From contig NIVC01000736.1 of NCBI GenBank assembly GCA_002269645.1, positions 62,001-126,000 on the forward strand: 64,000 bases of DNA, read 5' to 3'. The stretch comes from Macrostomum lignano. Its lineage: Eukaryota. The number at the start of each line of letters is the position of its first letter. Positions within the stretch are counted from its first letter, which is position 1. A model generated the notes under the pieces. That model was not told where the DNA came from, did not search any database, and worked only from the letters and a program-made list of their open reading frames with translations. Positions 1 through 50,200 of the stretch are shown piece by piece. A program made the translations under genes and the position numbers.

Positions 1-950
1 CGCGGACTTCGTGGGATAGCGATAAGTCCGATCTCAGTCAGAGAGGACGGCCGCCGCCGCATAAAACTCGGAGCCGCGCAGCCAGCCCCAGCCGTGAGAC
101 GGAGGGGACACAAAAGAGGCTGAGGCCAAACTCGATTGAATGTCCGGGCCCACGCGGATAGGCATTTGGAAAGTCCTCTCCCAAGAAGGAATTTTATCGG
201 AAATTTGCGCTAGAATTCCCTTCATTCTAGGAGTTTCCATCGCTCAAAGTCCATTTCTCTTCCCGCTCGGCTCCGATGCTGAGCTGCCGCTGTCCCTGGG
301 TAAGAGGAAGGCTGGGCGTCATTAATTAAAAGAGGGAGCCGAGGCTCACGGCCGCTTTGAATCAGTTCTGTCATTCAGGGCACGTGGCAGCGACAGGGCC
401 GAGTTCCCATGGCCGAGCAGAGCCAGGGTCAGCCCGGATCATCGGTCAAGTCTTGAACCCGATCGGTGGCTCGGAGCTTGGATCTCGAATAACCGTCAGT
501 ACAGCAGCTTGAAGCATTAACCCCCGGATTGCTTAATCGACATTTGTTTATAACAAAAATGGGACGCAGTAAAACAAAACTCCACCGCCACGGGACCGAA
601 TATTTGGACTTTTGCGCGACGATTGGAGTTGGGAGGCAGCCGGTCCTGCCGGTGTCCTCCTCGCGCACTTGCTTGCGGCGGTGCGGTTCGGATAAACAAA
701 CTCGCTTGGCGGCGTGAGAAACAGCCGCATCGCAACTTGCTGCCTTCAAGTGGGGCCGCAGAATGAAACACCACCCGATACCCCTCGGAATCTGGGATCC
801 CCATCTGCACCCGATTCCACCGCCCCGCACGCGTCCCCCACCATTTGTGACATCTTCGCGTTTCCGGATCTGCGCTTTTTATCACCTGTTTTTTGGTTAA
901 ACGATTAACTGTGTTTTTCATTAGCGAAAGGTTCCCTGTGTCCCCTGCGA

Positions 951-3328: not shown

Positions 3329-4176
3329 CCGTCTTCTTTCAATGCCTTTTCCATGAAGTCAAACCTGTCTCATTTACTTTACCACACAGCGAAGCAGCTT
3401 CCACTTCATCTTAATTACGATTCTCTGCCGTCCCGGAGCACCTGTAGAATTTTTTCCTTCTAAGTAAATATTTTTCCACAATTCGGGTTTCTCCTCCGAC
3501 CCGAGAGCTCTCCCCCCCCCCTGGCAGCCGGGGCTGGAGCGACAGCGCATCATTTTCAGACCAGCGGCTATCAGCACCAGCTGGACACCCAGGGCGGGGG
3601 CGGGCAGGCCTGGGGATCCGCTGTGCCAGCAGCTTTCTGCGCAGCTGCACCGGGCGCAGAGGATGCAGCAAGCAAAAAATATTTTGGGGGGACACATTTC
3701 CACCGTTGCGCGCTCTGGAACTCTGGGTGGATACTAAAATGGCTTTCTTCTGCTTTCTCTGCAGCACGCAGTTGCTGCTGCTGCTGCTGCTGCGGCTTTA
3801 CGACGCTGTTTATTTGAAAGTTCGAGGCGCCGCGCGCACTCTTTGGGGTTGTTTGGGGAATCGCAAGGCCTGCCAACTCAGCTTGAAGTCCAGACGCTTC
3901 GGCTCGCTGATCCAGACGCGAAACACTCCCGATTTGCGCTCACATTTCTCTTCTTTTCGTTAAACTTTAAGCAAGTTTTATTGAAAACCCGGGCAGTTTT
4001 AACCTAGAATGGCACGGAGCGGAAGCCGTGTGAAGATCGTTGAAGCGAAAGATACATGAAACTCACAGCATTGCCCAGTCTATTGTAGCCCCTGTTAAGG
4101 CCTTTCCTCTCTTAGCTGCTGCTCATTCTGGGTGTTAAAGTGCTGGGGACTAAATAAGGGTGAGCACACTTTTGCA

Positions 4177-4399
<223 letters not shown>

Positions 4400-23359: not shown

Positions 23360-26300
23360 TAAGTAACTAGCTAGCTAGCAGGGCGCGTCAGATGGCGCGC
23401 CGCAGAGCCTGGGAACGAACAAAGTCCGCTCCGTTGGCAGTGTCGGGCGCCCCAGCGTCGCACAACAGGCAGTCCACGAATCGAGGGTTCGGGCCTGACC
23501 CCGCCTGAAGGGACCCTGCAAGGTGAGCAGCAGGACGTCCTGAACAGGTTGGGGGCAGTAGCCCTCGGCCCGGATCACGTGGTTTGCCAGTTGAAGTCGC
23601 CGCCGGCGCATGATGGTGGACGGGCGCTGCAGTTTGGCCCGATCGTACAGGGCCTCGGTCCCGACGCTCTCGTCAGCTCGAAAGGCCGCACGGAGCAGCC
23701 CTGAGTGCGCCGAGTCCAGCTGCCGCTCTAGCGTATCCGTCAGCGTCCACGTCTCGGCGTTGTAGAGCAGGACGGTTTCAACCACCGCCTGCCACAGCCG
23801 AGCCCTCTGGCGGTCGGGCAGCACTTCGGATTGGAGGACGGCTCGGATCGAACGAAAGGCCGCCCAGGCAAGTCCTCTGCGCCGCCGGAGGTCCTCTTCC
23901 ACGTGAGGCACCAGACCGCCGAGGTAGGTGAACCGCTGGCAGCGTGCGAGCCTGGTCGTCTGCCCGTCTGCGACGCGGCACGTCAGGTCCGCTGGGATGT
24001 CGGCCGGCACAGTCAGCACCTCGGTCTTCAGCGTGTTGACAACCAGTCCGACGCTCGATGCCACCTCGACCAGCCTGTCGATCTAGCGCTGGGCGCCTTC
24101 AACGGACGAGGACAGGAGGGCGAGGTCGTCGGCGTAGCCAAGCACGCTTAGGCGCTTTCCGCCGTGGCGGCGACCGATGCGTCTGCGCAGCAGGAAGCGG
24201 TCATTAGCCGAGGGGAGTGCGGTCCGAAGCACCCAGTCCAGCAGCAGCACGAAGAGGAACGGCACAAGCGTGTCGCCATGCAGAACTCCTGATGAAGTGT
24301 CGAACAGGTCAGACAGGCCGTCCGCCGTCACCACAGCAGCTCGAGTATCGCAATACAGCGACATGATAGCGTCGATTAACTGCTGCGGGACCAGGTAGGC
24401 TTCTTCTTCTCCCATTCGGGCGCGCTCGGGCCAGGGCCCATGGCACCGGGCTTCAGACGGCGCCCGCCTTCGGAGGAAGTTCAGCACCGCGACGTAGTTC
24501 TCGAAAACTGCCGCGGGCTCCGGGCTTGCCCCCCAGAGGCGGCAGCGGTGTGGAGTCAGGGCGGGGCAGGAGATCAGCAGATGGGCCGCCGTCTCCTCTC
24601 CATCACCGCAGAAGCGGCAGGTGGGGGCCACGTCAACGCCGATGGCGGCCTGGAAGCCCCGCAGGGCCGGGCAGCGGTCGGCGCCGGCTGGCAAATCAGG
24701 CAAGGTGCCAGGCCAGCGAGCTCGTTCTCGCCGCCTCGGTGGCCGCCGCGTTGTAGGTCTGGTGCCAGCGGGCGAGGCAGTGGCGGCGGACGGCAGCCTG
24801 CGTGGCAGCCAACGGAACGGGCGCGGCGCCTTGTGCCAGCGTGGAGCCTCGTTTGGCGATCTCGTCCAAGGCCTCGTTGCCGAGGATTCCCGCGTGGCCA
24901 GGCACCCACTGCAGGTGGACCGTGGTTCCCCGGGCCGCGAGGTCGGCGAGGCTGGCCCAGACGGCGTCGATCATGGTGGCGCCCGTCGACCCGGAGCCGG
25001 ACGCGAGCGTGGTAAGCGCGCTCAGGGAGTCAAAGCAGATGCGGACCGGCGACAGCTCTTCAGGGTCCGGGGCCGCGAGCACCCACCGAAGGTCTCAGCG
25101 ATGGCCACTAACTCGGCGAGGAAACTGGACGTCACATGGCCAGCAGCGACGCACGGCGTGGTGTTGGGCTCGACCAGGATACCGCTGCCGCCGTCCAGGA
25201 TGCCGTCATTCGCCGCTCCGTCGTTCCAGACCACGGTGCGGGCGGGCGGCAGGGCGGCGAGCGTCTGCTCCGCCGCGGCTCTCCGGGCCGGCAGGTCCCC
25301 CGCGAGGTCGGGGAGGCCAGCTGCAGCCCGAAGGTGACGGAGTCCAGGTCAGCCCAGGGAGGGTGTCGTCGGGACAGCGTAGACGGGCTCTTGCGGGGAG
25401 CCGCCCAGGCCCGCAGCGCTGCAAACGCTGGCCGCCAGCCGCGGGCGCTTTGGAGGCGGCAGCGCGGGCCGACGCTGGCCGCGCAGGCGCGAAGCGGGTT
25501 GTCGGGCGGCAGCCTGAGGGTGCGCTCGTGGAGGAGGTCAGCGTGCATCTCCGCGCGGACTGCCATCGGCGGCAGCCCAGCCTCGCGCTCCAGCACCTCC
25601 GACCTGATGTTCCGCGGACACCCGGTGATGATGCGGTGATGAAGGGACCAGGTAGGCTCGAAGGACGAAAGGGAGCGCGGCTCTCAGCACCGAGTCAAAA
25701 GCCTTTCGAAAGTAAGCGAAGACAATGATCAGCATAGACTGGCGGATGCGCGCCTCCTCGATGACACGGCGGAGTGCAAGGATCTGTGTCACTGTACCGC
25801 GTTGCGGCCGGAATCCATTCTGCTCGTACCGCAGGTACGGGTCTAGCACCGACTGCAGACGATCGAGCAGCAGCCGGTTGAAGAGCTTCGCGGTGCAGGA
25901 CATCAGCGAGATCCCGCGGTGGTCTTCTTTCCAGTGGGAGCGGCGTGTCCAGTGGGAGCGCAAAACTGGCAGGTAGCGGCGACGCGGGCGCGTTCACGAT
26001 GCCGGCGAAGAAGTCGTGCAGTTCATTCCTGCGCTCCTCCGGGGTGTCGCCGGCAGTTTCAGCGCCACGCGCATTTTGCGCCCCGTCAGAGTCCTGACGG
26101 CCGTCCACACTGGGCGGCTCTTCACGTCGGGGCCGGCTGCAGTGATGGACCTGACGGCGTCGTCGACAGCGGCCTGCTGCCGCTCGTCTAGAAGCAAGGA
26201 CTATCCTAGTGATCCTTGTCTAGAAGGCGCTCAAACGCGTCTTCAGCGTCGCCTGTGGGCCGCCAGTTTCTGTGGAGTCGCTCGATGTTGAGCCGCGCCT

Positions 26301-28292: not shown

Positions 28293-31200
28293 ATGTCAAG
28301 TACAAACTCCGTCTCTGTCGTTGTTTCTGGAAAAATCAAACTACTCAGCAACAAGAAGGTAAGGCATAGCGCATAGGTGGCCGGCCGCCGCCGCCGCGGC
28401 CTACGTTCCAAAGTATTGATATATGTCTTGTAGCTTGAACTAAAGCTTGAACTAAAACAGTTGAAAATTTGCTAGAGATAATAAAGATTAACAAATTGTT
28501 TTTCTTTTTCAACAATTTTTAGATGCAAGACATGTGTTGGTTCAAATCTAGAGTTGTTGCATACCATGTCTCCCCCTCTCTAATAAAAAACCTTTTCCTT
28601 AATGGCATGTATCTATAACTAGTATATATTGTCATATTCAATGAGACCAACGCCTGCAGCACTTTAACCAATATCAACAAAGAGATTGTTAGGCAGCTCC
28701 CATCTTATTCTGCATTCCTACCATCATTTCCCAGTAGACAAATAAATTTAAAGAGAAAGGAATGTCTGCTCAGCAGACAAACTGTTGGCAGACAAACAAC
28801 TGGCACCCAAATAAAAGGAGGAAGAGTCCAGATCAAGAGTATAAAATCCTAAGGCTAAGGAAGGTTTTTAAGTTAGTTGGTTGTGGCTTTTTAAGTTTAA
28901 TAGGCCTAGGCCTAGTCATAGGAATTTTGAACCCTAATATATACCAATCTTTAAGATTAAGGCCAAGAGTTAGTGTCTTACTCATAGCAGTGTCAAACTA
29001 TAACTGATGAATGATTACAAATCAATAGAGGTTGGATAGGATTGAAATCATTGTGCAGGATCAGGATTGGGAAAAAATGTTTGGGATTAGGATTGGGATC
29101 TGGGAATCAGGATCAGGTCTTTAAAATATTACAAACAACATGTGTTAACAAGGTTGAACAAAAAATGTTAGGATCTAGAAATAAAACATAACATAATGAT
29201 GCAAAGTTGTTAAATTTGGTTTATACTATTTGCTTTCTTTATTCCAAAAGTAAAGTGATGGCATTTTAAATTGTCCAGATAGTTTTATACAATACAAATA
29301 AGCATTCTATGTGATATTATATGCTCCAATAAGCTGATAAAAAGTAGAAATTGTGAAAAAAGTTAAAATGAGGGTTAGTATTTTTTCTTTAAAAACATTA
29401 AAATGTGAATGAAATAAAGTACAATATTATAAAAGCAAAGTTTACTATAAACTCTAAATAAAAAGTAGTAAAAAACTAGTTGCAACCTTTAAAGATGAAA
29501 ATACAATTTGAAATTTAGCCAGAAAAAATAAAGATAAGCTGACAAAAGTTTTTCCTAAGTATAGATATAATAAAAGCCAATGACATTTCATTATGGCATG
29601 CCAAATTGAACAAAAGTAATAATATTCCCCAGGCCCCAGTCGTATTAGTTAGTTTTACAGACCCCCACCCCACTTCCCTGCTGCCAAATCAGCAGTATCA
29701 ATAAATAACAACAACAAGGCATTAAATGGTGCTTTGCAAGCTCACTTTCACAAAACATTCAGTCCAATAAAGTTATTTGCTTACTAAAGTGCATTTAGTT
29801 CATTTACTAGAGTGCGGAGGAACTCATGACCAAACACAGTTGCCATCTAAAAAGCCTCTCACATTATTTTGCTGAGATGCTAAGATGAAAGGCAAATGAA
29901 ATGGAGGTGAATGTTTACAAACTTTAGTAAACCTACTATTTACAAACATGTTTTTGGTTGGCTCAATACACGTACAGTACAATACAACAGTGGCTGTCCC
30001 CACCTATTTTCGTGGCTTTCCCCGTGGCAGAGTTCTCCCATGCAAACACATAGGCTTCTATGTTCACTCTTTAGGCCCATGGTTTTCCCATGGAAATTCC
30101 TGCGGCAGAGTCCCCATTTCCCCTACCACTCATGTCATCGGCTTATATATGTTTGGCAAGGAAAAATGCTAATGTGACAAAGCTATTGGAGGAAGGTATT
30201 ACTAATAATTGACAAGTTGGTCAATCTTCCTTATTATGTGTGGCTTAAAATACTTGTAACCTACTCGTATATAACGATTTAGAATCGATACACTCAAAGG
30301 CAAAGCCCTTGTTTACAAGGCTAGGGATAAGGCTTAGACAAAGGCTAAGGCTAGTTTGTTTACAAGGCTAGGAATGTAGTTTTAGTGCCAATTGTACTTT
30401 AGCCTATCATGCAACATTTCTGTCACAATAATAGAATGTTATTACATATGCTACAATTATAATTTTTTATGGTTAATGATATTTCTCTTTCATGAATTCT
30501 TATGAAAAACAGTTTCTCATTTTTTCTTTTTCATTAATTTTAGTGGAAGCAACGGTTTTGTGTGGTAGCCAAAACTGATTTTGCTGGTAAGCCAATTGAG
30601 CACTATTAATTATGTTTTTATCTATTTAACTTTAGTTATTATTAAACTGTATGCAAACTAATCCAGGATCTGTAAAGCTGTTTGTCTATAAAGAGGCATC
30701 CGACTACAAAAAATCAGCTGACCTGTCAGCCCAAGCACCATATGACACTGTCTATGGCCTCGACTCTGTGTCCAGTTCTGACAAATCGCCAGTCATGGCT
30801 GCCATCGTGCTCACCTGCGAGGATCGCCTCGTGCTGCTGGGATTCAACAGCTACAGTGATTTGACATTTTGGCTTGAGAAAATCAGTAACTGCGTTCAAG
30901 GTGAGCTGTTTAATCTCTGTTCATGGCATTGGATTCTCCCAGTAACCCTTGGTTATCACACTGGCCCTCTCTGCCCTTGAATCTCCCAATGACCCCTTGC
31001 TTATCCCACTGACCGTCTCTGCCCTTGAATCTCCCAATGACCCCTTGCTTATCCCAATGACCATTTGCTTATCCCAATCACCCTCTCTGTCCTTGAATCT
31101 CCCAATGACCCCTTGCTTATCCCAATGACCATTTGCTTATCCCAATCACCCTCTCTGTCCTTGAATCTCCCAATGACCCCTTGGTTATCACACTGGCCCT

Positions 31201-33758
31201 CTCTGCCCTTAAATCTCCCAATGAACCCTTGGTTATCCCAATGACCCTCTCTGCCCTTGAATCTCCCAATGACCCTCTCTGCCCTTGAATCTCCCAATGA
31301 CCCTCTCTGCCCTTGAATCTCCCAATGACCCCTTGGTTATCCCAATGACCCCTTGCTTATCCCAATGACCCCTTGGTTATCCCAATGACCCCTTGCTTAT
31401 CCCAATGACCCCTTGCTTATCCCAATGACCCGCCCGCCTTCCCAACCCGCCGGCCCAGACGCCAGCTATCGGGCCAGGTTCATCAAGTGCGAGTCCATCG
31501 GCAAGCCAACCCAGCAGCAGCTGTGTCCATCTGGCGGCGGCGGAGGCCGACTGCACGTGCAGCCGTCCCGGCTGTGCTTCTACTCGGAGCCGGCCGACTC
31601 TCACGGGGGCCTGGCCGTCTGGCCGCTGCAATTTATCAAGCGGTACATGGTTAACGAGGCCATGCGCTGCTTTGTGTTCGAGGGCGACGTTGGCTGCGGG
31701 CAGGGTGAGTAGTTTTTTAAATCTAGATGTCTGTCTTCGAAATCTAGATGTCTGTCTTCGAAATCTAGATGTCTGTCTTCGAAATCTAGATGTCTGTCTT
31801 CGAAATCTAGATGTCTGTCTTCGAAATCTAGATGTCTGTCCTCGAAATCTAGATGTCTGTCCTCGAAATCTAGATGTCTGTCTTCGAAATCTAGATGTCT
31901 GTCTTCAAAATCTAGATGTCTGTCTTTGAAATCTAGATGTCTGTCTTCGAAATCTAGATGTCTGTCTTCGAAATATAGATGTCTGTCCTCGAAATCTAGA
32001 TGTCTGTCCTCGAAATCTAGATGTCTGTTTTTGACATTTGACAGTTCGCGGCATGCAGTATTTCCAATGCGACAGGCGGCACCAGCTGTACCTCGACATG
32101 AAAGCGGCCTGTGTTAGCAAGCCGCTGCCCTCGCTGGCTCAGGGTGAGCTGAGAATTACTCTTATCATTTTGTACTTTTACACTGATTATTGTGTACTTT
32201 TATACTGATCATTGTGTACTTTTATACTGATCGTTGTGTACTTTTATTATGATGATTGTGTACTTTTATTATGATGATTTTGTACTTTTATGCTGATAAT
32301 TGTGTACTTTTATGCTGATAATTGTGTACTTTTATGTTGATCATTGTGTACTTCTATGTTGATCATTTTGGTTTGGCCTCAGATCTCTAACTATGGTAGA
32401 CACCGCTAGCCATTGTGTTGATGTGACTGCACAGCTGGCCACATGCTCGCTAGTGTGTTCCCCCATAATTTCCCCATAATCCTCTTGTCATCCCAACAAC
32501 GCCTTCCTAGGCTGCACTGTCGAGGTCGCCGATCCACGCCGGCCAACCGCTAGCAGCAGCATCGACATCCCGAAGCCGCGAGCCGACAGTCAGCAGCAGC
32601 CGGAACCGGGAACGGGTAACCGGTGTCGGCACCGGTGCGCCAGTCGCAGGCTGTGGGATCTGCAGCGCTGTCGCTGCCGCTGCCACAACCCGGCTGCTGG
32701 CCAAGTGAGCGGCGAGGAGCAGCAGCTGAAGGCGCAGCAGCAGCTCGGCCAGTGGACGGCGGACAGCGGCTACAGCGGCGGCTTGCCCAGTTACTTCACC
32801 TTGTGCACCTTGCTGAAGCCTTGCGGCAGTCGGGATTACTGCAACCTGCCTGCCGGTGTCGGCAGCGCTCCACCAACTGCGGCTGCGGCGATGTCCAAAC
32901 TGAGGCTGGCCAGTCTGACTTGGCGTCGGCGACAGGTTTGTGACTCATATGGTAGCCATGGCAACTGAAAGCCGCGAGACTTTTCATACTGTTGGTTCTG
33001 GCTCTTGAAGCAGACCAATTTTGCTTTTCCACTGCATCCATAAGGAGCGCTGCAGCGGGCTGAATTCGAATTGATAAAATTTGCAGAACTCGCAGCAGGC
33101 GGACCCGCCGGGCCCCGCCAACGGCTACCGGCGGCTGGTCCGCTCCAGCTCCGACCTGTGCGGCTCCGCCAGCAGCTGCTGCAGCTCCTGCGGCTGCCGC
33201 TCGAACTGCCGCGACCCAGCGGCTGACGGCGGCTTCAGCAGCTCTGGCAGCGCCGCCACCTCCGACGACTTTCGCGTGCGCAACCCGCGCCACGGCTTCG
33301 AGTACGTCAGCAGGCAGCGCGTCGCCTCCCTGTCGGCGGCAAGCGGCTGCCATGCGAGTCTGCCGAATCCCGCACCGCTCAGCAAGAAGCCCACCGAAAG
33401 CGCGGCCCGCCGCCCAGCTGACCCGTGCCGGTCGGCGCCCTCAGCGACTTCAGCTGCCGGCGACACCTCGACGCTGCTGTACGCGACGCTGGACCACTCG
33501 GCGGCTGCTGCCCAGCCAGCTCTGGCAATGGCCTCCGCGACCCCGGCGGCTGCTGGCGCTCCCCAGCTGAACTACACGGAGGTTGACCACTGGAAGACCG
33601 GCGCGTTTCGCGAGATCGCGGAGCAACTGGACGGCTCCCGAAGGTTGCAGCAGCAGCAGCACGGCAGATCGAATTCCGGCTCGGCCTCTGGTACTTCCGG
33701 TCACCGTCGGTCGTTTATCCGCATGTTCCAGCGCGGGCACTCATTCAGGCAGGACTGA
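28293..33758 (+). CDS. DOK7: DOK7-like PH-PTB docking protein, 594 aa. Exons: 28293-28358, 30544-30586, 30667-30900, 31459-31704, 32045-32143, 32511-32935, 33087-33758
   Basis: 1785 nt, all phases consistent. SGKIKLLSNKK|WKQRFCVV, LFVYK, VLLGFNS and VWPLQFIKRY..FVFEG..CG align with human DOK7 (EGQVKLRDGKK|WKSRWLVL, LVYK, IMLGFDS, QWKLSDLRRY..FIFEGGTRCG). The first four intron positions match human DOK7 as I recall them. Confidence 0.75.
30960..31432. repeat. Intronic minisatellite (CCCAATGACCCCTTGCTTAT and CTCTCTGCCCTTGAATCT units)
   Basis: Tandem repeat filling DOK7 intron 3. Confidence 0.9.
31718..32028. repeat. Intronic minisatellite, 21-bp unit (AAATCTAGATGTCTGTCTTCG), ~14 copies
   Basis: Fills DOK7 intron 4. 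Confidence 0.93.
32170..32370. repeat. Intronic minisatellite, 21-bp unit (TTGTGTACTTTTATGCTGATA), ~9 copies
   Basis: Fills the 5' half of DOK7 intron 5. Confidence 0.88.
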
Positions 33759-33992
33759 GCGGCAGAGCTGACAGTGAATTGTGCCGCTTGAGCCCCCCGC
33801 AGGGCTGCCTCAGCACTGTCGGCAGTTCTCATTGAGACAATCAGCTTTTGACCTCATCGATCGCGCATGCTCAATGCTTGGTTCGCGAGCTTCAGGCTTT
33901 TCTGTAAATATTGGCCTCAGCTAATCAGCTCCTTCCGTGCAATCGTTTTTTGCTTCTAAAAGAAGCGCTTTGAATTAAATATCTACCTCGCT

Positions 33993-36105
33993 ATTACACC
34001 ATTTTACCCTCGATTTTGAACGGGGAGAACTTCGAGACTGACAAACTCCTCTTCAATATTGACACTCTATGGTCGGGCACTCAAAATCTACAATCAATAT
34101 CGACAGATCAAGCTTCAATTTTGACAAACTCTGGTTCAATTTTGACAATGCACGTTTAGTCAACTTCCCCTGGGAGAATTCGTTAACAAATTAATCCAAT
34201 GAAAGCCTGAACGGGGCTGAAGTGAGCTGTGCAAAATCAGCTTATTCTGACTTTGCTTTTTGGATCTACAAGTATTGATAAAATTTATTTTTCTCCATCG
34301 TTTACACACACAGACTAAAATCGCCTGACTGGTTGGGCTCCAAAGTCTGATTCTATTTTGACAGAGTTGCTTCAAAACTGACACTCTATGGTTTGTGTAC
34401 GCAAAAAGTCCGCTTCATTTTTGACAACTCCGAATCAATATCGAACAGTTTACAATCGATTTTGACTAAGACATTTTTTGAAATAGATTTTGACAATTTT
34501 TACTAAGATTTCTCTCTTGAGTAGGGGGGGGGGGATACTTGGCTATTTGGGAGAAGGGGTACTGGCTGCATGTATCTACGAGTACATGTATAGGAATCTT
34601 TCTATCCAGGTATGCTTGCTATCTGGGTGGATGTTTGCTACCTGGATGATGCTTGCTATCTGCAAGATGCTTGCTAGCTGGGTGGATGCTTGCCATCTGG
34701 GTAGATGCTTCTATCTGGGTGGATGCTTGCTATCTGGGTGGATGCTTGCTATCTGGGTGGATGCTTGCTATCTGGGTGGATGCTTGCTATCTGGGTGGAT
34801 GCTTGCTATCTGGGTGGATGCTTGCTATCTGGGTGGATGCTTGCTATCTGGGTGGATGCTTGCTATCTGGGTGGATGCTTGCTATCTGGGTGGATGCTTG
34901 CTATCTGGGTGGATGCTTGCTATCTGGGTGGATGCTTGCTATCTGGGTGGATGTTTGCTACCTGGATGATGCTTGCTATCTGCAAGATGCTTGCTATCTG
35001 GGTGGATGCTTGCTATCTGGGTGGATGCTTGCTATCTGGGTGGATGCTTGCTATCTGGGTGGATGTTTGCTACCTGGATGATGCTTGCTATCTGCAAGAT
35101 GCTTGCTATCTGGGTGGATGCTTGCTATCTGGGTGGATGCTTGCTATCTGGGTGGATGCTTGCTATCTGGGTGGATGTTTGCTACCTGGATGGATGCTTG
35201 CTATCTGGGTGGATGTTTGCTACCTGGATGATGCTTGCTATCTGCAAGATGCTTGCTATCTGGGTAGATGCTTCTATCTGGGTGGATGCTTGCTATCTGG
35301 GTGGATGCTTGCTATCTGGGTGGATGCTTGCTATCTGGGTGGATGCTTGCTATCTGGGTGGATGCTTGCTATCTGGGTGGATGTTTGCTACCTGGATGAT
35401 GCTTGCTATCTGCAAGATGCTTGCTATCTGGGTGGATGCTTGCTATCTGGGTGGATGCTTGCTATCTGGGTGGATGCTTGCTATCTGGGTGGATGCTTGC
35501 TATCTGGGTGGATGCTTGCTATCTGGGTGGATGCTTGCTGTCTTGGGATGTTAAATGACCGGCCTTTTGCTAGAGTCCCTTGAGAGAGCAGGGACTCTAG
35601 CAAGCATCCCTGGATAGAAAGATTCATCTTAGTCAAAATCGATTGTAAACTGTTCGATGTTGATTCGGAGTTGTCAAAAATGAAGCGGACTTTTTGCGTA
35701 CACAAACCATAGAGTTTCAGTTTTGAAGCAACTCTGTCAGGATGGAATCAGACTTTGGAGCCCAACCAGTCAAGCTATTTTAGTCTGTGTGTGTAAAGGA
35801 TAGAGAAAAATAAATTTTATCAATACTTGTAGATCCAAAAATCAAAGTCAGAATAAGCTGATTTTGCACAGCTCACTTCAGCCCCGTTCGGGCTTTCATT
35901 GGATTAATTTGTTAACGAATTCTCCCAGGAGAAGTTGACTAGACGTGCATTGTCAAAATTGAACCAGAGTTTGTCAAAATTGAGGCTTGATCTGTCGATA
36001 TTGATGGTGGATTTTGAGTGCCCGACCATAGAGTGTCAGTATTGAGGAGGAGTTTGTCGGTTTCGAGGTTCTCCTTGTTCGGAGTCGAGGGTAAAATGGT
36101 GTAAT
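33993..36105. mobile_element. Long-TIR foldback DNA element: 479-bp arms (33993-34471, 35627-36105) around a satellite core
   Basis: Arms align without gaps, 26 mismatches; TA flanks CACC...GGTG (Tc1/mariner-like, inferred). An inner 26-bp inverted repeat (34594-34619 / 35600-35625) brackets the satellite. Confidence 0.85.
34610..35540. repeat. 19-bp minisatellite (GGATGCTTGCTATCTGGGT) inside the foldback element
   Basis: Tandem repeat; explains ORFs 34490-35583. Confidence 0.95.
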
Positions 36106-36647
36106 CATGTCATTCTAGCCTCTACCTCATCTATTTATTTTACTTCATTATGTTCTCAATCATACTACTTGTATTGCCTTTATCAGTAGCAATCATAGTT
36201 TGTTGCTGCTCTGAATTATTTAAACTTGTAAAAAGACAAAATAAAGAAGCTTCCAGCAGGCCATGAAAAGCTTTGCTTGATTTTAAACAGTTTTTACAAT
36301 CGCCTTGAGAAAGTAAACTAAATTGAAAGTTCTAAGAGCTCCTATACTAATAATTTGTATGTAATTATTGCAACCCAAGAAGGCCTTAAAACCAGATCGG
36401 GGGAGGTGGGTGCGCGCGGGGCAGAGAGACGGAGAGGGAGGGGCGCGACCGAGGGAGAGAAAGTACATATGGCACACAAAGTGGACAGAGCCAGGGAGAG
36501 AGCGCAAACGGGGCAGTGCCCGAGCGGTCATTAACCACCGTACGAGGGCAAACGTCGCCCCGAAAGGGGCACTGCTTACAGGTAACAAAACCAAACGTAA
36601 CCAATTACACATGCATACATGTAGACGATTCACGGAGGAAACGTTAC

Positions 36648-36965
36648 TTGTATTGTATTGAGTGCTTTGTATTGAGTCATTGAGCCGCAATGCAAATTAC
36701 AGTCGCAAGAAAGGAGCCTGTTGACATTAATTTCCAAGTTGATCTTGGGCATATAAGCTGTCCAGTTTCATTTGCATGATGTGACAGTTCCTGAGACAAT
36801 TAGACAACTCAGCTAATGATGGCACCCATTTTACAGCTGGGTGAACTGGAGAAAATGTAGAGTTAAGTGTCTTACTAAGGACACAAATTGTTCCGAGTGG
36901 CTCGGGATTCGAACTTCCGACCTTTCAGTCGTGAGTCCGACAACTAACCACTAGGCTACAACCAG
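36648..36965 (-). mobile_element. tRNA-derived SINE with a CORE/Meta-like central domain
   Basis: Minus strand: A box TAGCCTAGTGG, B box GTTCGAATCCC, then GTGTCCTTAGTAAGACACTTAAC...CCCAGCTGTAAAATGGGTGCC and an (AATAC)n tail. The cloverleaf is broken, so it is not a tRNA gene. Confidence 0.75.
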
Positions 36966-37483
36966 CCCCATGGCAGTTGGGAATAATGTAGATATAAATA
37001 GCTCGTACACTAGACAATTGAGCTAGAGAAAAAATGTCCAAAAAGTGCACATCGACAAATCCATACCCATCGCTCGTAAAGTGACGGACGTTTCAATTCA
37101 AAAGACTGTCGCCAGGCCCATGAGCTCGCACACGAATTAACGGGAATTTCGGTGCTCTGGGCTGTTCAATGGATAGCGGGCATCGGGATGCATTGCTAAC
37201 CGAATTACTGACCAGGTATTAAGCAGAGTTTCTACTGTAGTTTTTCACAATGCGCGCAGAAGGCAACGCGGGAAGGCAACTGCGGCGACTCACGGGCCGC
37301 CCGCATCGCCCACGCCGCTTCCCGCAGGCGATTTCTGCTGCTGATCGCCCAGCCCCATCTGCGCCCATCTCCCCTGAGCCCCACCTTGCTGTGCACGCGG
37401 CCTGCAAGCATCTCTGCATGCGGAGAGACCAGCAGGTGAGTTGATGAGGCAGCGCAACGGCTTCCCTTCCAATACACCGCAGT

Positions 37484-38544: not shown

Positions 38545-38800
38545 GTCAGAGTGAGTGTAATCAGAGTGAGTGTAATCAGAGTGAGTGTAATCAGAGTGAG
38601 TGTAATCAGAGTGAGTGTAATCAGAGTAAGTGTAATCAGAGTGTGTGTAATCAGAGTGAGTGTAATCAGAGTGAGTGTAATCAGAGTGAGTGTACTCAGA
38701 GTGTGTGTAATCAGAGTGAGTGTAATCAGAGTGAGTGTAATCAGAGTGAGTGTAATCAGAGTGAGTGTAATCAAAGTGAGTGTACTCAGAGTGAGTGTAC
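38545..38800. repeat. 15-bp minisatellite (CAGAGTGAGTGTAAT), ~17 copies
   Basis: Tandem repeat read directly. Confidence 0.93.
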
Positions 38801-44530: not shown

Positions 44531-45178
44531 CCAAGCCAGGACTACAAAAGTTTCTAGACTATTGTTTGCCCTAAGTACAAATTGTCTGATTTGGCTAAAT
44601 CTATTTATAGCCAGTTTAGCCATAGACAAAATATGTCTTTGAGGTCTGTGTGGACAAGTCTAGCATAGCCTATATAAGAGATAAAGCAAGGTTAAGTATT
44701 AAGAAACTGTTAATACAATTTGAAATTTAGAAAAAAGTGACAAATTGAGTTATCCAAAATATTTTGGAGTTTGGATCTAAGAGAAGTCAGTGCTATTTTA
44801 TCATAGCATGCCAATGATAGAGTGAAATAGCAATGCAGAGCTTTGATTAGGTGCACCTACATAAGGATAAAATAAAAAAATGTGATCTAGAGTCAATAAA
44901 TTTGCTGTTCATGCATAGATATTTCTTTAAAAAAACAGCAATTTAAAAATAGCTCTTTTAGTTTATGTGTTATCTAGAGATTTCCATTTCTCTAAGTGTT
45001 TCCTTCTTGTAGAACCACCTATATGTATATAAAAATTCACAATGGGATAATAAATATGCTAGAAAATTCCGGCATATAACTATAGAGGCCATATTCTAGA
45101 TTATAGTATATGTAAAAACAAGGCCTAGTTATAAAAATATATAAGGTTGGATAGATTTGCATTTACTTTTTTAATATA

Positions 45179-46617
45179 CAAGGGGTGTCCCAAAAGTTCC
45201 TAGAATGTCTAACATAGCTCTTCAATGAAGCCATGAAATTTCACGCCCATGGTGTCAAATGAAAAAAAATTTTTGTCACAAAAAAAGTTAAAATCATGTT
45301 GATATCTTTTTTTATTCAGGAACTGCAGCAAGAAACATGAGCAAAGTTCAGGGGTAGTTACACAATCTCAAAAATCTATGGCAATGATTTTAAACAATAA
45401 AGCACAGAACAGTTCATACCATTGATGAATCCTTGGGGCATGCACCAATTCAAAATTCAAAGCAAATTGTCAAGCTCAACCTGCGGCTTCTCCACATAGT
45501 CCCCATTCAGCTGGACACATCTCTGCCACCTTGCAAGCATGCCGTCAATGGCCTGGGCAACAACAGTTTTGATCCATTGATGGGATGTCTCGCCACACAA
45601 TGTGCAAGGATGGCCAGAGTGTGGCTGATCATTCACAGCAGACTGGCCATCTCTAAAGTGTTCAATCCATCCATAAATGGCAGTTTTTTTCAGGCTGTTC
45701 TCACTGTGGATAGAGAATAAGTGGTTAGAAATCTTGGCTTCACTCCATCCTACTGACCAAGGGGCAAAAACTTGACTTTGTTGACTTTCAAGGCTCTAAA
45801 GAAAACTCATTTTTGCAAAAAATTTCAAGTTGAAAGCAAGCACTTGGTATGAATTATCTGCACTTATGCAAAAGCTCAGATTGGAGGAATATAGCATGCT
45901 GACAAGTATGTCAATGGCTGAAACACGAGTGCAGGTAGCGCACCAGGGTTTTTGCCATAGACACACAAGTTTAAGTGCTTGATTTGCATTCTTATTTGAT
46001 CCAACATGTGTGGCTAAAGTAGACAAGGGTAGAGCTGGGGGTGTGGAGTTAGACTTGAACCATAGACAAAATATACTCGAGCTAGTCTAAACATTCTTGC
46101 ACAATGGAAAGAAGATTATGCTTGTAGTCTATGGCTGTTATGCTAAATATAAAAACATTGCACATTACATTCTTGCACAATTGACATTCCTGCATGGAGT
46201 GCACATGTAAATTCAAGGTGCTTTTACCATAGACACTTGCATTTCTGCATACTATGGCAACTTCCAAAGCATTCTTGCATGCTGGATAAAATAAGAATAG
46301 CTTTATGAGCATTTCTGCTTTTTTCCATAGACACTACCACATCTTTCTGACACATCAATAGAACGAATTCAAAATGAAAATATCCAGAAATGAAGATGAA
46401 ATATTATTTTCATTGATATGTCAGGTTGTGTAACACTACCACTGACCTTTGCACACATTTCTTGCTGCAGCTCCTGAATAAAAAAGATATCAACATGATT
46501 TTCACTTTGTTTTCTTTGTGACAAAATTTCCTTTCATTTGACACCATGGGCATGAAATTTTATGGCTCCATTAAAGAGCTACATTAGACATTCCGGGAAC
46601 TTTTGGTACACCCCTCG
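45179..46617 (-). mobile_element. Internally deleted mariner element with ~160-bp TIRs and TA TSD
   Basis: TA|CAAGGGGTGTCCC...CACCCCTCG|TA. Minus-strand remnant AIYGWIEHFRDGQSAVNDQPHSGHP (HTH) is fused to GMLARWQRCVQLNGDYVEK (C-terminus). Confidence 0.85.
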
Positions 46618-47282
46618 TATATGCACAATATCTAACCAATCTAGATAGGTAATAAAGTGACTAAATGCTACAAAACCAATTAACCAAGTACCAAAAGTTA
46701 TATCATATTATTTGTCACCTTACTAAAATATTTTAGTCAATAATTCTATTGTTTGTTACATTAAATTTTCATTGAATTCAATTAAATTGAAGGGTTAAAG
46801 TTTTAAATATCAATATTTAGTTTTATAATACTATTGAGTATTATATTAGCAAATTAAGTAAAAGTAAATTAAAAAACTTGCTTCTGGCAAAACTTAGTCT
46901 GATCACAAATTAGAAGAATTTTTTTCAACAAAATAGGAAAATAGATCTGAATATACTTTATTTATCAAAGCAAAGCAAAATATTATATTCATATATACTG
47001 TTTATTGAATTAGTGCTGCTAAATATTTTATAATTAATCATAATTCATCATTTTAGCTGATAATATAATAAATTTGTGTTGTTCATGTGAATATATTAAT
47101 TATATTCACATGAGGTTGTTTTGTTTAAGTAGTGTTGTGTTGGCCTTGTTGAAAATGTTATTGTACAAAAGCAAAGTAAAGTGGAAACAACATGCAGCTT
47201 ACTTGACTCCAATTTCTTCTCCAATGGTCAGTTGATAAACCATAAAGTCCGCTTTCCAGCTCGCCGCTGTCCCAGTCACGCC

Positions 47283-50200
47283 ATGAGTCTGCAGCGCAAG
47301 AAGGACACCGCGCCCAGTCAGCGGTTCTTCGAGCACCCGGAGGTGATCGCCGAGTTCGATACGGTCCGCACCTGGCTCACCCGCAATCACAAGAAACTCA
47401 TGCAGACGGAGCCGCCAACCAACAAGAGCCTGGCCTCCATCTGCTACCAGCTGCTCTGCTTCCAGGAGGAGCAGGTCCGCCGCCAGGCAAAGTCGCCGCC
47501 GTATCCGACCCGCCTGCCCGGCCGGCTGTTCCTGGACTTCCAGCCGGGCGGCGCGCTCTGCCAGATGTTCCTGACTGTGTTCCGCTTCAAAGGCGAGCAG
47601 GGCTGGCGCAGGCTGGACTTTCACAAGGCCTCCTGGCTGGAGAAGAATCTGGAAATGCTGGCGCTGATGCGCAAGGAGCTGCTGGACTCCAAGCTGTGGT
47701 CGCTGCCGCGGGTGCACATCAAATCAGACGTGCCCGAGGACATCCGGACTCGCCTGCTGGACATTTGCCAGCGACACGGCCTCGAGCTGGCTGACACCGA
47801 GGACGCCTGCACACACCTGGTGTACGGCCCGGCCAGCGCTGCCCCGGCCGCCGCCGCCCAGCAGCTGCTTGAGGACAAGGTCACCCCGGCCTTCAAGGAG
47901 GGCAAGCACTCGGTGGTGCATTGGAAGGGCACCGTGTCCAGCTATGATGTGTTTTACACTAGCCCCGCTGAGCTGGAGGTTGAGGTAATCAGCATGGGAT
48001 AAATCCCAGCTCAGGCGGATTCTGGGTAAAGAGATTCGCCCATCTCATATGAGATTTCTTTCATCTCATATGAGATTTCCTCTCTATCTGCGATTCGTTC
48101 TTTATGCAAGGACTTGAGATTCCTTCTCCATTTCTGAATGAGATTTCCTCTCCGTTCCGACTATGAGATTCCCTCTCTACCCAGAATAAGAGATTCCCTC
48201 TCCATTCCAAATATGAGATTCCCTCTCCACCCAGAATAAGAGATTCCCTCTCCACCCAGAATATGAGATTCCCTCTCCACCCAGAATATGAGATTCCCTC
48301 TCCACCCAGAATATGAGATTCCCTCTCCATTCCGAATATGAGATTCCCTCTCCATTCCGAATATGAGATTCCCTCTCCACCCAGAATATGAGATTCCCTC
48401 TCCACCCAGAATATGATATTCCCTCTCCACCCAGAATACGAGATTCCCTCTCCATCCCGCATATGAGATTCCCTCTCCATTCTGAACAATATGAGATTTT
48501 CTCTCCATCCAGTGTATGAGATTCTCTCTACCTGAGACACTGAGATTCCCTCTGCCTGAGACACTGAGATTCCCTCTGCCTGAGACACTAGAGTTCCTCT
48601 GCCTGAGACACTAGATTCCCTCTGCCTCAGACACTAAGATCCCTCTGCCTGAGACACTGAGATTCCCTCTGCCTGAGACACTAGATTCCCTCTGCCTGAG
48701 AAACTAGATTCCCTCTGCCTGAGACACTAGATTCCCTCTGTCTGAGACACTAGATTCCCTCTGCCTAAGACACTAGATTCCCTCTGCCTAAGACACTAGA
48801 TTCCCTCTGCCTAAGACACTAGATTCCCTCTGCCTGAGACACTAGATTCCCTCTGCCTGAGACACTAGATCCCTCTGCCTGAGACACTAGATTCCCTCTG
48901 CCTGAGACACTAGATTCCCTCTGCCTGAGACACTAGATTCCCTCTGCCTGAGACACTAGATTCCCTCTGCCTGAGACACTAGATTCCCTCTGCCTGAGAC
49001 ACTAGATCCCTCTGCCTGAGACACTAGATTCACTCTGCCTAAGACACTAGATTTCCTCCGCCTGAGACACTAGATTCCCTCTGCCTAAGACACTAGATTC
49101 CCTCTGCCTGAGACACTAGATTCCCTCTGCCTGAGACACTAGATTCCCTAATCAATCCCACTCCTTCGCCAGGTGACCCGCTGCGTCCCGGACGGTCCCT
49201 GGGAGCTGGACGCCGCTTACCTGTTGACGCTGGACGAGCAGTGCGAGTTCCCGCCGGAGGAGGACTTCCTGGTGGAGTACCAGGAGTTCGCCCGGCGCAC
49301 CGGCCGCAAGCCAGCGGCGCCGCCCCGCTACTACTCGGTTTCCGAGTTCGTGGAGCTCAAGCGGGAGAAGAAAATTCAGAAGCGAAAGCGATCGCCTTCG
49401 CCGCCAGCCTCGTCGACCGGCGCCCAGGCGGTGGCCGCATCGACGCCTTCGTCGAATTCCCGTTCCGGCGTTGGCGGAACCGCCGGTTCCGGCCGGAAGT
49501 CGTCGGCTGCCAACGTCTCGGCGGCGGCGGCAGCTTCCGGCGGCGGCGCTGGCGGCAAGAAGGCGCGCCGGGAGACGGGCGCCTCCGCTGCTGCTTCTGC
49601 GACAGGCAGCCAGCCCTCCGGCGAGCCCATGGACGCGGAAGCGCCCGGCGGCGGGTCCGGCCGCGCTGGCGGCGGCGCCGAGGAGGACGCGGACGCCACA
49701 GCCGCTACGGTCGGCGGCACGGAGGGCGGCGGTGGCGGCAAAGTCGAAGACGGAGAGGATGAGCACGGGCAGGTGAGGTCACACTACTGGTAGTAGTGCA
49801 GACAGCCTGTGAGATTAATTTCCGATCTGTTGCTTACCTGGCAGAGGCAACATGAAGCATTTATTGGGCCTCTTTCACAAGCTCGAAATTTCAAATTTCT
49901 GAGGACACTCGGTCTGCAACAAACAACTGCCGACACAATCTCAGAAATAAACCCCGGTCGTAAGCTAAACCCCAGCCCTAACCTAAACCCCAGCCCCAAC
50001 CTAAACCCCAGCCCTAACCTAAACCCCAGCCCTAACCTAAACTTCACCCTAACCTAAACCCCAGCCCTAACCTAAACCCTAGCCATTTTAGCATTTCTAC
50101 TACTGTTTAGACAGTAAATAGTGTGTTTTGCTAATGTATAGAGGAATTTTGCTGTGGATAATCAACTGCAAAAAGCAATGTATCACAATTGTATTGCATT

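What the first reader, a model, noticed from the sequence alone, without database searches (positions are those of the whole stretch)
33993..36105. Inverted-repeat arms differ by an ADAR-like A-to-G signature
Seen (hand alignment): of 26 arm mismatches, 18 are G on the + strand where the partner arm predicts A (15 right arm, 3 left arm). Only 3 are the opposite transition class and 5 are transversions. They cluster (AAAA to GGAG at ~36081, AAAATAG to AGGATGG at ~35739), none has a 5' G neighbour, and only 3 of the 15 right-arm sites are CpG. Established: ADAR hyper-edits long dsRNA and disfavours 5' G. Inference: + strand transcripts reading through from DOK7 (stop 235 bp upstream) fold into a ~480-bp duplex. 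Either edited RNA reads leaked into the assembly consensus, or edited cDNA was written back into the genome.
Basis: partly seen in the sequence, partly recalled or inferred. Interest (0 to 1): 0.72.

Follow-up and report, generated by a model that had tools for sequence, protein, structure and literature searches.

The report
One-strand A-to-G hypermutated foldback transposon
A 2.1-kb foldback-type DNA transposon next to a Dok-like gene carries a real, one-strand burst of A-to-G changes that looks like ADAR editing, but this single copy cannot show whether RNA editing, sloppy DNA copying or an assembly error produced it.

Summary
The arms 33993-34471 and 35627-36105 align without gaps and have 26 mismatches: 15 T/G, 3 G/T, 3 C/A and 5 transversions.

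The skew is not a regional bias. Other inverted repeats and 11 tandem arrays in the window show no plus-strand A>G excess.

The 14-nt sub-repeats inside the arm polarise 11 of the 15 T/G sites as A>G on the plus strand of the right arm. This is about 1900:1 over C>T in the left arm.

The changes avoid a 5' G (0/18) and favour a 3' G. Ten of them fill one stem zone, 21-66 nt from the ends, on both arms, where all ten mismatches are G·U-compatible.

The host is a non-coding foldback-like DNA transposon with a 19-bp x 50 satellite core and a candidate 8-bp target duplication. It probably comes from a flatworm-like genome.

So the ADAR-like signature is real in this sequence. RNA involvement is untested. 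A DNA-only rival, wobble misincorporation during fold-back repair synthesis, fits nearly as well. No other copy of the family could be retrieved, so the decisive comparison is still to be done.

The parts
33982..33989 (.). Candidate 8-bp target-site duplication, left copy (TCTACCTC)
   Evidence: The same 8-mer lies at 36121-36128. The chance of any shared 8-mer between the two 40-nt flanks is about 3%.
33990..34471 (+). Left arm. The ungapped core is 33993-34471. GCTA (33990-33993, its last base being the first base of the core) pairs with TAGC at 36116-36119. By sub-repeat consensus this arm is the more ancestral one.
34014..34059 (+). Hot zone, left side (stem positions 21-66). It holds 3 plus-strand G-for-A sites (34022, 34023, 34036) and lies opposite 7 right-arm sites.
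   Evidence: All 10 mismatches in the zone are G·T type. All three left-arm sites falling in the zone has p=0.0013.
34472..34593 (+). A 122-nt segment present only on the left side of the stem. It includes an 11-G run at 34524-34534.
34594..34621 (+). Inner short inverted repeat, left half (pairs with 35599-35626)
   Evidence: 27-28 nt, 96% identity.
34612..35543 (+). Central satellite: 19-bp unit ATGCTTGCTATCTGGGTGG, 49.7 copies
35599..35626 (+). Inner short inverted repeat, right half
35627..36105 (+). Right arm. It carries 15 plus-strand G where the left arm predicts A (35659, 35740, 35741, 35744, 35890, 35942, 35984, 36009, 36039, 36046, 36059, 36067, 36081, 36082, 36084).
36039..36084 (+). 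Hot zone, right side: 7 of 13 plus-strand adenines changed to G
36106..36120 (+). Right terminal extension. It has about 11 extra nt relative to the left end, then TAGC, which pairs with GCTA at 33990-33993.
36121..36128 (.). Candidate target-site duplication, right copy (TCTACCTC)
33081..33758 (+). Upstream ORF whose stop lies 235 nt before the arm. Its coding status is unverified.
   Evidence: It has no homologues or Pfam domains.
30651..31712 (+). Dok-like PH/PTB-type exons of the upstream plus-strand gene
   Evidence: 53% identity to M. lignano A0A1I8IWN0, E=3e-42.
33974..33979 (+). ATTAAA poly(A)-signal-like hexamer. Its first base lies 16 nt before the element's first base (33990).

Best explanation
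The object is a roughly 2.1-kb non-coding, foldback-type DNA transposon (33990-36120). Each 479-bp arm is built from about 11 degenerate copies of a 14-nt motif (TTCAATTTTGACAA), and the arms flank a 19-bp satellite. It sits just downstream of a plus-strand Dok-like gene.

The plus strand of its stem has undergone a burst of A-to-G substitution: 15 sites in the right arm and 3 in the left. The burst is densest 21-66 nt from the stem base, where a third of the plus-strand adenines on both arms changed. The changes never follow a G and are often followed by a G.

My preferred reading has four steps.
1. A plus-strand transcript, either read-through or 3'UTR of the upstream gene, or made at a former locus of the element, folded into the long hairpin. 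This step is inferred.
2. ADAR deaminated adenosines in one zone of that hairpin. This step is inferred.
3. The inosine-bearing strand was copied into germline DNA. Possible routes are cDNA-mediated gene conversion, RNA-templated break repair, or direct ADAR action on the DNA strand of an RNA:DNA hybrid. This step is inferred.
4. The inosines were then fixed as G. This step is inferred.

Shown here: the pattern itself, its polarity, its sequence context, its confinement to one strand and one stem zone, and the lack of any regional mutational bias.
For: - Mismatch classes are 15/3/3/0 plus 5 transversions.
- Strand asymmetry is 18:3, p=0.0015.
- Polarity: 11 of 15 T/G sites have T as the sub-repeat consensus, Bayes factor about 1900 over the C>T alternative.
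- 5' G is depleted (p=0.017) and 3' G is enriched (p=0.0095); together p=0.0011. This matches the published ADAR hyper-editing motif (PMC4365171).
- In the hot zone all 10 mismatches are G·U-compatible on the plus strand. 10 of 30 adenines changed, 0 of 9 with a 5' G (p=0.013). The left-arm sites co-localise with the right-arm sites (p=0.0013). That pattern requires the plus strand folded on itself.
- Adenines in a favourable context (5' not G, 3' G) number 28 in the right arm and 14 in the left. This explains part of the arm skew.
- The plus strand is the sense strand of the upstream gene.
- The plus-strand hairpin is 54 kcal/mol more stable than the minus-strand one.
- Controls show no regional A>G bias.
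- ADAR1 and ADAR2 are active in planarian flatworms (PMC8797187).
- ADARs can deaminate dA in DNA/RNA hybrids (PMC5389660).
- A reverse-transcriptase fragment lies in the same window.
Against: - There are no RNA data and no DNA reads, so nothing ties the changes to RNA.
- The element has the anatomy of a cut-and-paste DNA transposon: long terminal repeats, a candidate 8-bp duplication, no poly(A) tail. An RNA-to-DNA step is therefore an added rare event.
- The arm skew of 15:3 is only partly explained by context. Among adenines without a 3' G it is still 8:2.
- 5' U is not favoured over 5' A.
- ATTAAA at 33974 may end most transcripts before the element, and AATAAA at 35809 lies inside the right arm.
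- Hits recur at the same motif positions, so the 18 sites are not fully independent.
- This is one locus picked out after the fact.
Confidence: 0.35

Rival explanations
1. DNA-only hypermutation. The right arm is a low-fidelity copy of the left arm, made when a nascent plus strand folded back and used its own left arm as template. This could have happened at the birth of the foldback element or during break or gap repair. A proofreading-less polymerase of the Pol eta or Pol iota type inserted G opposite template T. That wobble error gives left T / right G on the same strand. The rarer G:dTTP and C:dATP errors give the minor classes.
For: - The class hierarchy T/G 15 > G/T 3 = C/A 3 > A/C 0 is the usual misincorporation hierarchy.
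- The right arm is the derived arm at 11 T/G sites. It is also derived at the polarisable transversion at 34382 and, from my reading of the unit alignment, at 34092.
- 14 of 18 sites sit in WA context, p=0.05, which is the Pol eta motif (PMC6037775).
- Pol eta misincorporates at 1e-2 to 1e-3 and stabilises the T:dGTP wobble pair.
- Translesion polymerases take part in gap repair after transposon excision in Drosophila (PMC3330096).
- Foldback-primed inverted synthesis at breaks is documented (PMC11724301).
- No RNA step is needed.
Against: - 3' G enrichment is not a known Pol eta feature.
- Four sites have a 5' C, which is not WA.
- A change rate of 10% of template T overall, and 50% in the hot zone, is above the quoted Pol eta range.
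- There are no indels across 479 nt and 14 homopolymer runs, although such polymerases also make frameshifts.
- Priming from the inner 28-nt repeat should have copied the 122-nt left-only segment into the right side.
- An in-situ fold-back would not restore the right flank and the duplication. The event would have to predate insertion.
- 34022 polarises weakly as a left-arm change.
Confidence: 0.28
2. Assembly or consensus artefact. The G calls are not in the animal's DNA. They could come from systematic long-read base-calling errors in the trailing arm of an inverted repeat, from mis-polishing with reads from other family copies, or from RNA-derived reads entering the consensus.
For: - Nanopore reads lose accuracy inside inverted duplications, in the part that passes the pore after the junction (PMC7229812).
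- Base-caller errors depend on the local k-mer, which could mimic recurrent hits at the same motif positions.
Against: - The arms align with zero indels, and 14 homopolymer runs of 4-5 nt have identical lengths. Noisy long-read consensus errs mostly by indels.
- Errors of this kind should affect both arms once both read orientations are pooled.
- RNA-seq is not normally used to call a genome consensus.
- The rest of the window shows no similar anomaly.
Confidence: 0.1
3. Selection rather than mutation. The plus-strand transcript works as a long hairpin, for example as an endo-siRNA precursor or a 3'UTR structure. Substitutions that keep pairing as G·U were tolerated, while A·C mismatches were purged.
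For: - 18 of 26 mismatches are G·U-compatible on the plus strand, and all 10 in the hot zone are.
- The plus-strand fold is more stable than the minus-strand fold.
Against: - One mismatch in a 479-bp stem is nearly neutral, so a 6:1 filter is implausible.
- Tolerance predicts C>T as often as A>G and changes spread over both arms. Here at least 12 of 18 are A>G and 15 of 18 lie in one arm.
- It does not explain the 5' G avoidance or the clustering.
- No Rfam family matches.
Confidence: 0.07
4. Ordinary divergence plus post-hoc selection of a striking locus. This may be helped by non-independence, such as concerted changes among sub-repeats or conversion from a diverged family member.
For: - Changes recur at the same motif positions (position 1 three times, position 8 three times, positions 6 and 9 twice each). 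This lowers the number of independent events.
- Only one locus could be examined.
Against: - Several roughly independent tests are each significant at 0.001-0.02.
- The local background spectrum is transversion-rich with C>T above A>G.
- Conversion from a diverged copy would bring mixed mismatch types, not 10 of 10 wobble type in one zone.
Confidence: 0.12
5. Opposite polarity. Cytosines on the plus strand of the left arm were deaminated to T in CC context by an AID/APOBEC-like enzyme acting on single-stranded DNA.
For: If C is taken as ancestral, 11 of 18 sites have a 5' C against 29 of 180 in the background, p=0.0001.
Against: - Sub-repeat consensus makes T ancestral at 11 of 15 sites. Under C ancestry, 11 of only 16 eligible cytosines would have had to revert to the motif consensus. 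The Bayes factor is about 1900 against.
- The CC signal mirrors the 3' G signal seen under A>G polarity.
Confidence: 0.03

Closest known systems
Foldback-type long-TIR DNA transposons (Drosophila FB, Galileo, Tetris; Tm1 of root-knot nematodes)
   Same: It shares arms of hundreds of bp built from short sub-repeats, a non-coding middle domain with tandem repeats, no transposase ORF, and a candidate 8-bp duplication. Tetris has 8-10 bp duplications (PMC4079207).
   Different: No second copy and no autonomous partner could be found, so mobility and superfamily are unknown. Here the satellite sits between the arms rather than inside them. The one-strand A>G burst does not appear in the foldback-element papers I consulted (full text searched only for Tetris).
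ADAR hyper-editing clusters in inverted-repeat transcripts (Alu pairs in human; transposon hairpins in worm and fly UTRs)
   Same: The changes are A-to-G only and on one strand. G is depleted 5' and enriched 3'. Clusters are dense inside a long, near-perfect duplex, and both arms are affected in one zone (PMC4365171).
   Different: Those clusters are RNA-versus-DNA differences. Here the G's are in the genome sequence itself, comparing arm with arm.
Genomic fossils of edited retroelements (APOBEC G>A and ADAR A>G clusters between retrotransposon copies in mammals; recalled from memory, not checked here)
   Same: Both read a strand-coordinated editing signature from paralogous DNA copies.
   Different: Retroelements pass through RNA and cDNA as a matter of course. 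This element looks like a DNA transposon, so an RNA route is not built in.
Pol eta WA-motif A:T mutagenesis (somatic hypermutation, clustered repair-associated mutations)
   Same: It shares strand-biased A>G at WA through the T:dGTP wobble pair (PMC6037775).
   Different: The density here is far higher (10-50% of sites). A 3' G preference is not part of the Pol eta motif as described in PMC6037775. The setting is a germline transposon rather than an immunoglobulin gene.

Membership tests
Foldback-type non-autonomous DNA transposon | Long terminal inverted repeats making up much of the element | tested here: met
   The arms are 479 nt (94.6% complementary) with inner 28-nt and outer 4-nt extensions, in an element of about 2131 nt.
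Foldback-type non-autonomous DNA transposon | Arms built of short sub-repeats; non-coding middle domain | tested here: met
   Each arm has about 11 units of TTCAATTTTGACAA. The core is a 19-bp x 49.7 satellite. Only short or repeat-derived ORFs are present.
Foldback-type non-autonomous DNA transposon | Target-site duplication flanking the termini | tested here: inconclusive
   TCTACCTC occurs at 33982-33989 and 36121-36128. The chance of such a match is about 3%, and the two termini are not perfectly symmetric.
Foldback-type non-autonomous DNA transposon | Multiple dispersed copies in the genome | not testable with these tools
   There is no other copy in the window. Protein, metagenome, prokaryote-genome and viral collections gave nothing real. 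The source genome is not available.
ADAR hyper-editing cluster | Only A-to-G, all on one strand | tested here: met
   18 of 21 transitions are plus-strand G-for-A. 12 are polarised by sub-repeats (11 right arm, 1 left arm).
ADAR hyper-editing cluster | G depleted at -1, G enriched at +1 | tested here: met
   0/18 versus 24% (p=0.017) at -1, and 44% versus 17% (p=0.0095) at +1. The motif is as described in PMC4365171.
ADAR hyper-editing cluster | Lies in a long double-stranded RNA-forming region | tested here: met
   The predicted plus-strand hairpin is -839.5 kcal/mol with 471 pairs. This is a prediction only.
ADAR hyper-editing cluster | Seen as an RNA-versus-DNA difference that depends on ADAR | not testable with these tools
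   No reads or expression data are available. The G's are in the assembled DNA.
Pol eta-type WA mutagenesis | Mutated A preceded by A or T | tested here: inconclusive
   14/18 versus 53% of unchanged adenines (149/283), p=0.05. Four sites have a 5' C.
AID/APOBEC-type C>T editing | C is the ancestral base at the changed sites | tested here: not met
   Sub-repeat consensus is T at 11 of 15 sites, Bayes factor about 1900 against C ancestry.
Hairpin-RNA (endo-siRNA) locus or curated structured RNA | Match to a known RNA family, or small RNAs and covariation | tested here: not met
   No relevant Rfam match at E<=1 in 33000-37000; the single hit (Ruegeria trans44 sRNA, 20.5 bits vs gathering 108, E=0.025, 33776-33876 minus strand) lies upstream of the element and far below threshold. 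Small RNAs and orthologues cannot be tested.
DOK7 (label for the upstream gene) | PH plus PTB domains with recognisable homology to Dok-7 | tested here: inconclusive
   There is no Pfam hit and no PDB hit. The best homologues are M. lignano 'PH domain-containing proteins' at 53% and 46% identity. The ORF ending at 33758 has no homologue.

The most novel reading that the evidence does not exclude
The germline DNA of a flatworm-like animal preserves a fossil of ADAR hyper-editing of a DNA-transposon hairpin. Under this reading, inosines made on a folded plus-strand transcript, or made directly on the DNA strand of an RNA:DNA hybrid at a break, were copied into the chromosome. That would be RNA-to-DNA information flow, or natural ADAR editing of DNA, at a locus that is not a retroelement.
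Probability: 0.3. Interest if true: 0.8.

Novelty: new variant of a known kind. Interest (0 to 1): 0.5.

Why it matters
If the A>G burst is an ADAR footprint, RNA editing could occasionally be written into the germline at ordinary loci. That would be a directed source of A>G mutation in hairpin-forming transposons. It would also give a natural example for the claims that ADARs act on DNA:RNA hybrids and that transcripts can template repair.

If it is a polymerase footprint, it records how one arm of a foldback element was made or repaired by very low-fidelity fold-back synthesis. That would bear on how long-TIR elements arise.

Either way, comparing the arms of young inverted repeats is a cheap genome-wide screen for one-strand hypermutation. 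With one locus and no reads, the present case is suggestive only.

Tried and rejected
- **Other copies in the window.** BLAST of the arm and spacer ends, and a motif scan, found none.
- **Other copies through protein databases.** The upstream ORF had no homologues. A concatenated six-frame translation of the arm found nothing among 5.8 billion proteins.
- **Other copies by exact DNA scans.**
  - The terminal 20-mer found nothing in metagenomes.
  - An internal 21-mer gave 3 metagenome hits and 1 prokaryote hit. All were chance matches of 21-24 nt.
  - A 22-mer found nothing in viral contigs.
- **Orthologous loci.** The two Macrostomum lignano homologues are not on record as contigs.
- **Known RNA family.** Rfam gave none.
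- **DOK7 identity.** Pfam and PDB gave no support.
- **Regional transcription- or replication-linked A>G bias.** Rejected, because other inverted repeats and 11 tandem arrays show none.
- **Two independent insertions of a retroelement head to head.** Rejected, because of the shared candidate duplication, the paired termini and the absence of a poly(A) tail.
- **CpG decay.** Rejected, because only 3-4 sites are CpG.
- **C>T polarity (APOBEC-like).** Rejected on sub-repeat polarity.
- **Two-ended gap repair with error-prone initial synthesis.** Rejected, because it predicts T>C rather than A>G on the plus strand of the right arm.
Full report
**1. The observation**

The inverted repeat is real. 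The arms are 33993-34471 and 35627-36105, 479 nt each. They align without a single gap, are 94.6% complementary, and lie 1155 nt apart.

There are 26 mismatches:
- 15 have T in the left arm and G in the right arm on the plus strand.
- 3 have G left and T right.
- 3 have C left and A right.
- 5 are transversions.

The two quoted clusters are present: GGAG at 36081-36084 and AGGATGG at 35739-35745. No changed site follows a G once neighbouring changed sites are set back to A. Three of the right-arm sites are CpG.

**2. Is it more than chance?**

Under any strand-symmetric mutation process, the T/G class has the same expectation as C/A, and G/T has the same expectation as A/C. The observed counts are 15 against 3 (p=0.0075) and 3 against 0. 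Pooled, this is 18 against 3 (p=0.0015).

Taking A>G as the direction gives the following context results:
- 5' G: 0 of 18, against 69 of 283 unchanged adenines (p=0.017).
- 3' G: 8 of 18, against 49 of 283 (p=0.0095).
- Both rules together: p=0.0011.
- Changed sites lie next to each other more often than expected (p=0.03).

Two controls show that the region has no general bias of this kind:
- The other inverted repeats in the window have no plus-strand G·T excess and carry 40-60% transversions.
- Variants within 11 tandem arrays give A>G 10, T>C 9, C>T 23, G>A 13 and 55 transversions.

A single mismatch class is therefore inflated, at this one locus.

**3. Polarity**

However, the arm holds about 11 degenerate copies of a 14-nt motif, TTCAATTTTGACAA, and these act as internal outgroups.
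- Twelve of the 15 T/G sites fall inside units. At 11 of these, T is the majority state at the same position in the other units, and C is seen in 0-2 of them.
- If T is ancestral, 11 of 15 hits fall on a class that makes up 31% of eligible bases.
- If C is ancestral, 11 of only 16 eligible cytosines would have had to revert to the motif consensus.
- The likelihood ratio is about 1900 in favour of T ancestry.

This matters because the opposite polarity gives an even stronger context signal: CC>CT at 11 of 18 sites, p=0.0001. That signal is the mirror image of the 3' G enrichment. The APOBEC-like reading is rejected on polarity, not on context.

**4. A hot zone shared by both arms**

Ten mismatches lie at stem positions 21-66, counted from the termini. 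These correspond to 34014-34059 on the left and 36039-36084 on the right.
- All ten are G·T type on the plus strand, seven in the right arm and three in the left.
- In this zone 10 of 30 plus-strand adenines changed.
- None of the 9 adenines with a 5' G changed, against 10 of the 21 without (p=0.013).
- The chance that all three left-arm sites fall in this zone is 0.0013.

A process that hits the same strand on both arms, in the same stretch of stem, needs that strand folded on itself as RNA or as single-stranded DNA. As a corollary, the plus-strand RNA hairpin is predicted at -839.5 kcal/mol and the minus-strand one at -785.7.

**5. What the object is**

The repeat has this layout:
- It extends inward by a 28-nt pair, 34594-34621 with 35599-35626.
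- It extends outward by GCTA (33990-33993, overlapping the core's first base) with TAGC at 36116-36119, with about 11 extra nt at the right end.
- The 8-mer TCTACCTC flanks both ends, at 33982-33989 and 36121-36128. This is a candidate target-site duplication, with about a 3% chance of occurring by accident.
- Between the arms lie a 122-nt left-only segment with an 11-G run and a 19-bp satellite of 49.7 units.
- There is no credible ORF and no Rfam match.

This is the anatomy of a non-autonomous foldback-type DNA transposon. Tetris, for example, has long arms, a non-coding middle domain and 8-10 bp duplications (PMC4079207).

The window comes from an animal genome. It contains:
- A SMARCC-like gene with SWIRM-associated and Myb domains.
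- A piggyBac-type transposase remnant.
- A reverse-transcriptase fragment.

Exons upstream of the element, on the plus strand, match PH-domain proteins of the flatworm Macrostomum lignano at 53% identity (E=3e-42). The source is therefore probably a flatworm related to macrostomids, but not M. lignano itself.

The DOK7 label is not verified:
- Pfam and PDB give no hits.
- The ORF that ends 235 nt before the arm has no homologue.
- An ATTAAA hexamer starts 16 nt before the element's first base (33990), and AATAAA occurs inside the right arm. Read-through transcription is therefore plausible but not shown.

**6. Mechanisms**

*ADAR-type deamination (preferred, about 0.35).*
Every feature that could be measured fits:
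- The changes are A>G only and on one strand.
- Both arms are affected in one duplex zone.
- G is avoided at -1 and favoured at +1, as in published hyper-editing clusters (PMC4365171).
- Up to half of the adenines changed locally.
- The affected strand is the sense strand of the upstream gene.
- Adenines in a favourable context are twice as common in the right arm (28 against 14), which explains part of the 15:3 skew.

Background that makes the steps possible:
- ADARs are active in planarian flatworms (PMC8797187).
- One route into DNA is conversion by a cDNA of the edited transcript, or RNA-templated break repair. I recall both as established but rare, and did not check them here.
- Another route is direct deamination of dA in an RNA:DNA hybrid. 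This has been shown in vitro (PMC5389660), and ADAR2 is reported at break-associated hybrids (PMC8448848).

The weak link is the transfer into DNA. None of it can be tested here.

*Low-fidelity fold-back DNA synthesis (about 0.28).*
Suppose the right arm was synthesised using the left arm of the same strand as template. Then the commonest polymerase error, G inserted opposite T, gives exactly left T / right G on one strand.
- The class hierarchy 15 > 3 = 3 > 0 is the usual misincorporation order.
- The right arm is the derived arm at nearly all polarisable sites, including two transversions.
- Fourteen of 18 sites are in the Pol eta WA context (p=0.05; PMC6037775).
- Translesion polymerases act in gap repair after transposon excision (PMC3330096).
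- Foldback-primed synthesis at breaks is known (PMC11724301).

Points against it:
- The 3' G preference is not explained.
- The local change rate is very high.
- There are no indels.
- The 122-nt left-only segment should have been copied.
- An in-situ event would not restore the right flank, so the event would have to predate insertion here.

*Lesser rivals.*
- An assembly artefact (about 0.10) is made less likely by the complete lack of indels and by 14 length-matched homopolymer runs. Nanopore reads are, however, known to degrade inside inverted duplications (PMC7229812).
- Selection for a G·U-tolerant RNA hairpin (about 0.07) does not explain the direction, the arm skew or the neighbour rule.
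- Ordinary drift made to look striking by post-hoc choice (about 0.12) is helped by recurrent hits at the same motif positions. It is contradicted by several roughly independent tests and by the local background spectrum.

**7. What could not be done**

The decisive comparison is with other copies of the family, and it failed with every route available:
- There is no copy in the window.
- The protein-indexed collection has no ORF resembling the arm translations.
- Exact DNA scans of metagenome, prokaryote and viral collections gave only chance 21-24-mers.
- The flatworm homologues have no contigs on record.

DNA reads and RNA-seq are not available.

**8. Verdict**

The ADAR reading is partly supported. 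The signature is genuinely ADAR-like, but RNA involvement is unproven and a DNA-only mechanism fits nearly as well.

The element itself is an ordinary kind of transposon. The one-strand A>G burst in its stem is the unusual part. Interest is moderate at 0.5. It would be high if reads and family copies show that the G's are truly in the DNA and arose on the transcribed strand.

Noticed in passing
window 45174-45391 / 46400-46622: A second inverted repeat (about 225 nt, 83% identity) lies upstream of the SMARCC-like gene. It shows the opposite skew on the plus strand: C·A 12 against G·T 5, which is more G·U-compatible on the minus strand. The skew is not significant (p about 0.14).
   Followed up: partly
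window 47181-52903 (+): A SMARCC/BAF155-like gene with SWIRM-associated regions 1-3 and a Myb/SANT domain. It includes an unusually long uninterrupted, Ala/Gln-rich ORF of 720 aa.
   Followed up: partly
window 60303-62012 (-): A piggyBac-type transposase (DDE_Tnp_1_7) is split over two adjacent ORFs. It is either a domesticated or a decaying copy. It is unrelated to the foldback element, whose candidate duplication is 8 bp rather than TTAA.
   Followed up: partly
window 23375-26108 (-): A very GC-rich (68%) non-LTR retrotransposon remnant with RVT_1 and a weak zf-RVT match, broken into several ORFs. It shows that reverse-transcriptase sources exist in this genome.
   Followed up: partly
window 949-3329, 4176-4397, 5488-6492, 8642-9269, 9695-10491, 31719-32028, 38546-38799, 48138-49149: The window is exceptionally rich in mini- and microsatellites. 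One 10-bp unit is repeated 63 times at 100% identity. A 40-bp array at 5488-6492 has a partial inverted copy at 7083-7269.
   Followed up: no
window 34524-34534: An 11-G homopolymer lies inside the 122-nt segment that is present only on the left side of the stem. It could mark an insertion or repair junction.
   Followed up: no
window 35569-35601: A small, perfect 12-bp hairpin (GCTAGAGTCCCT ... AGGGACTCTAGC) lies between the end of the satellite and the inner inverted repeat.
   Followed up: no
window 33974-33979: An ATTAAA poly(A)-signal-like hexamer starts 16 nt before the element's first base (33990). The element may have landed at or next to the upstream gene's original 3' end.
   Followed up: no
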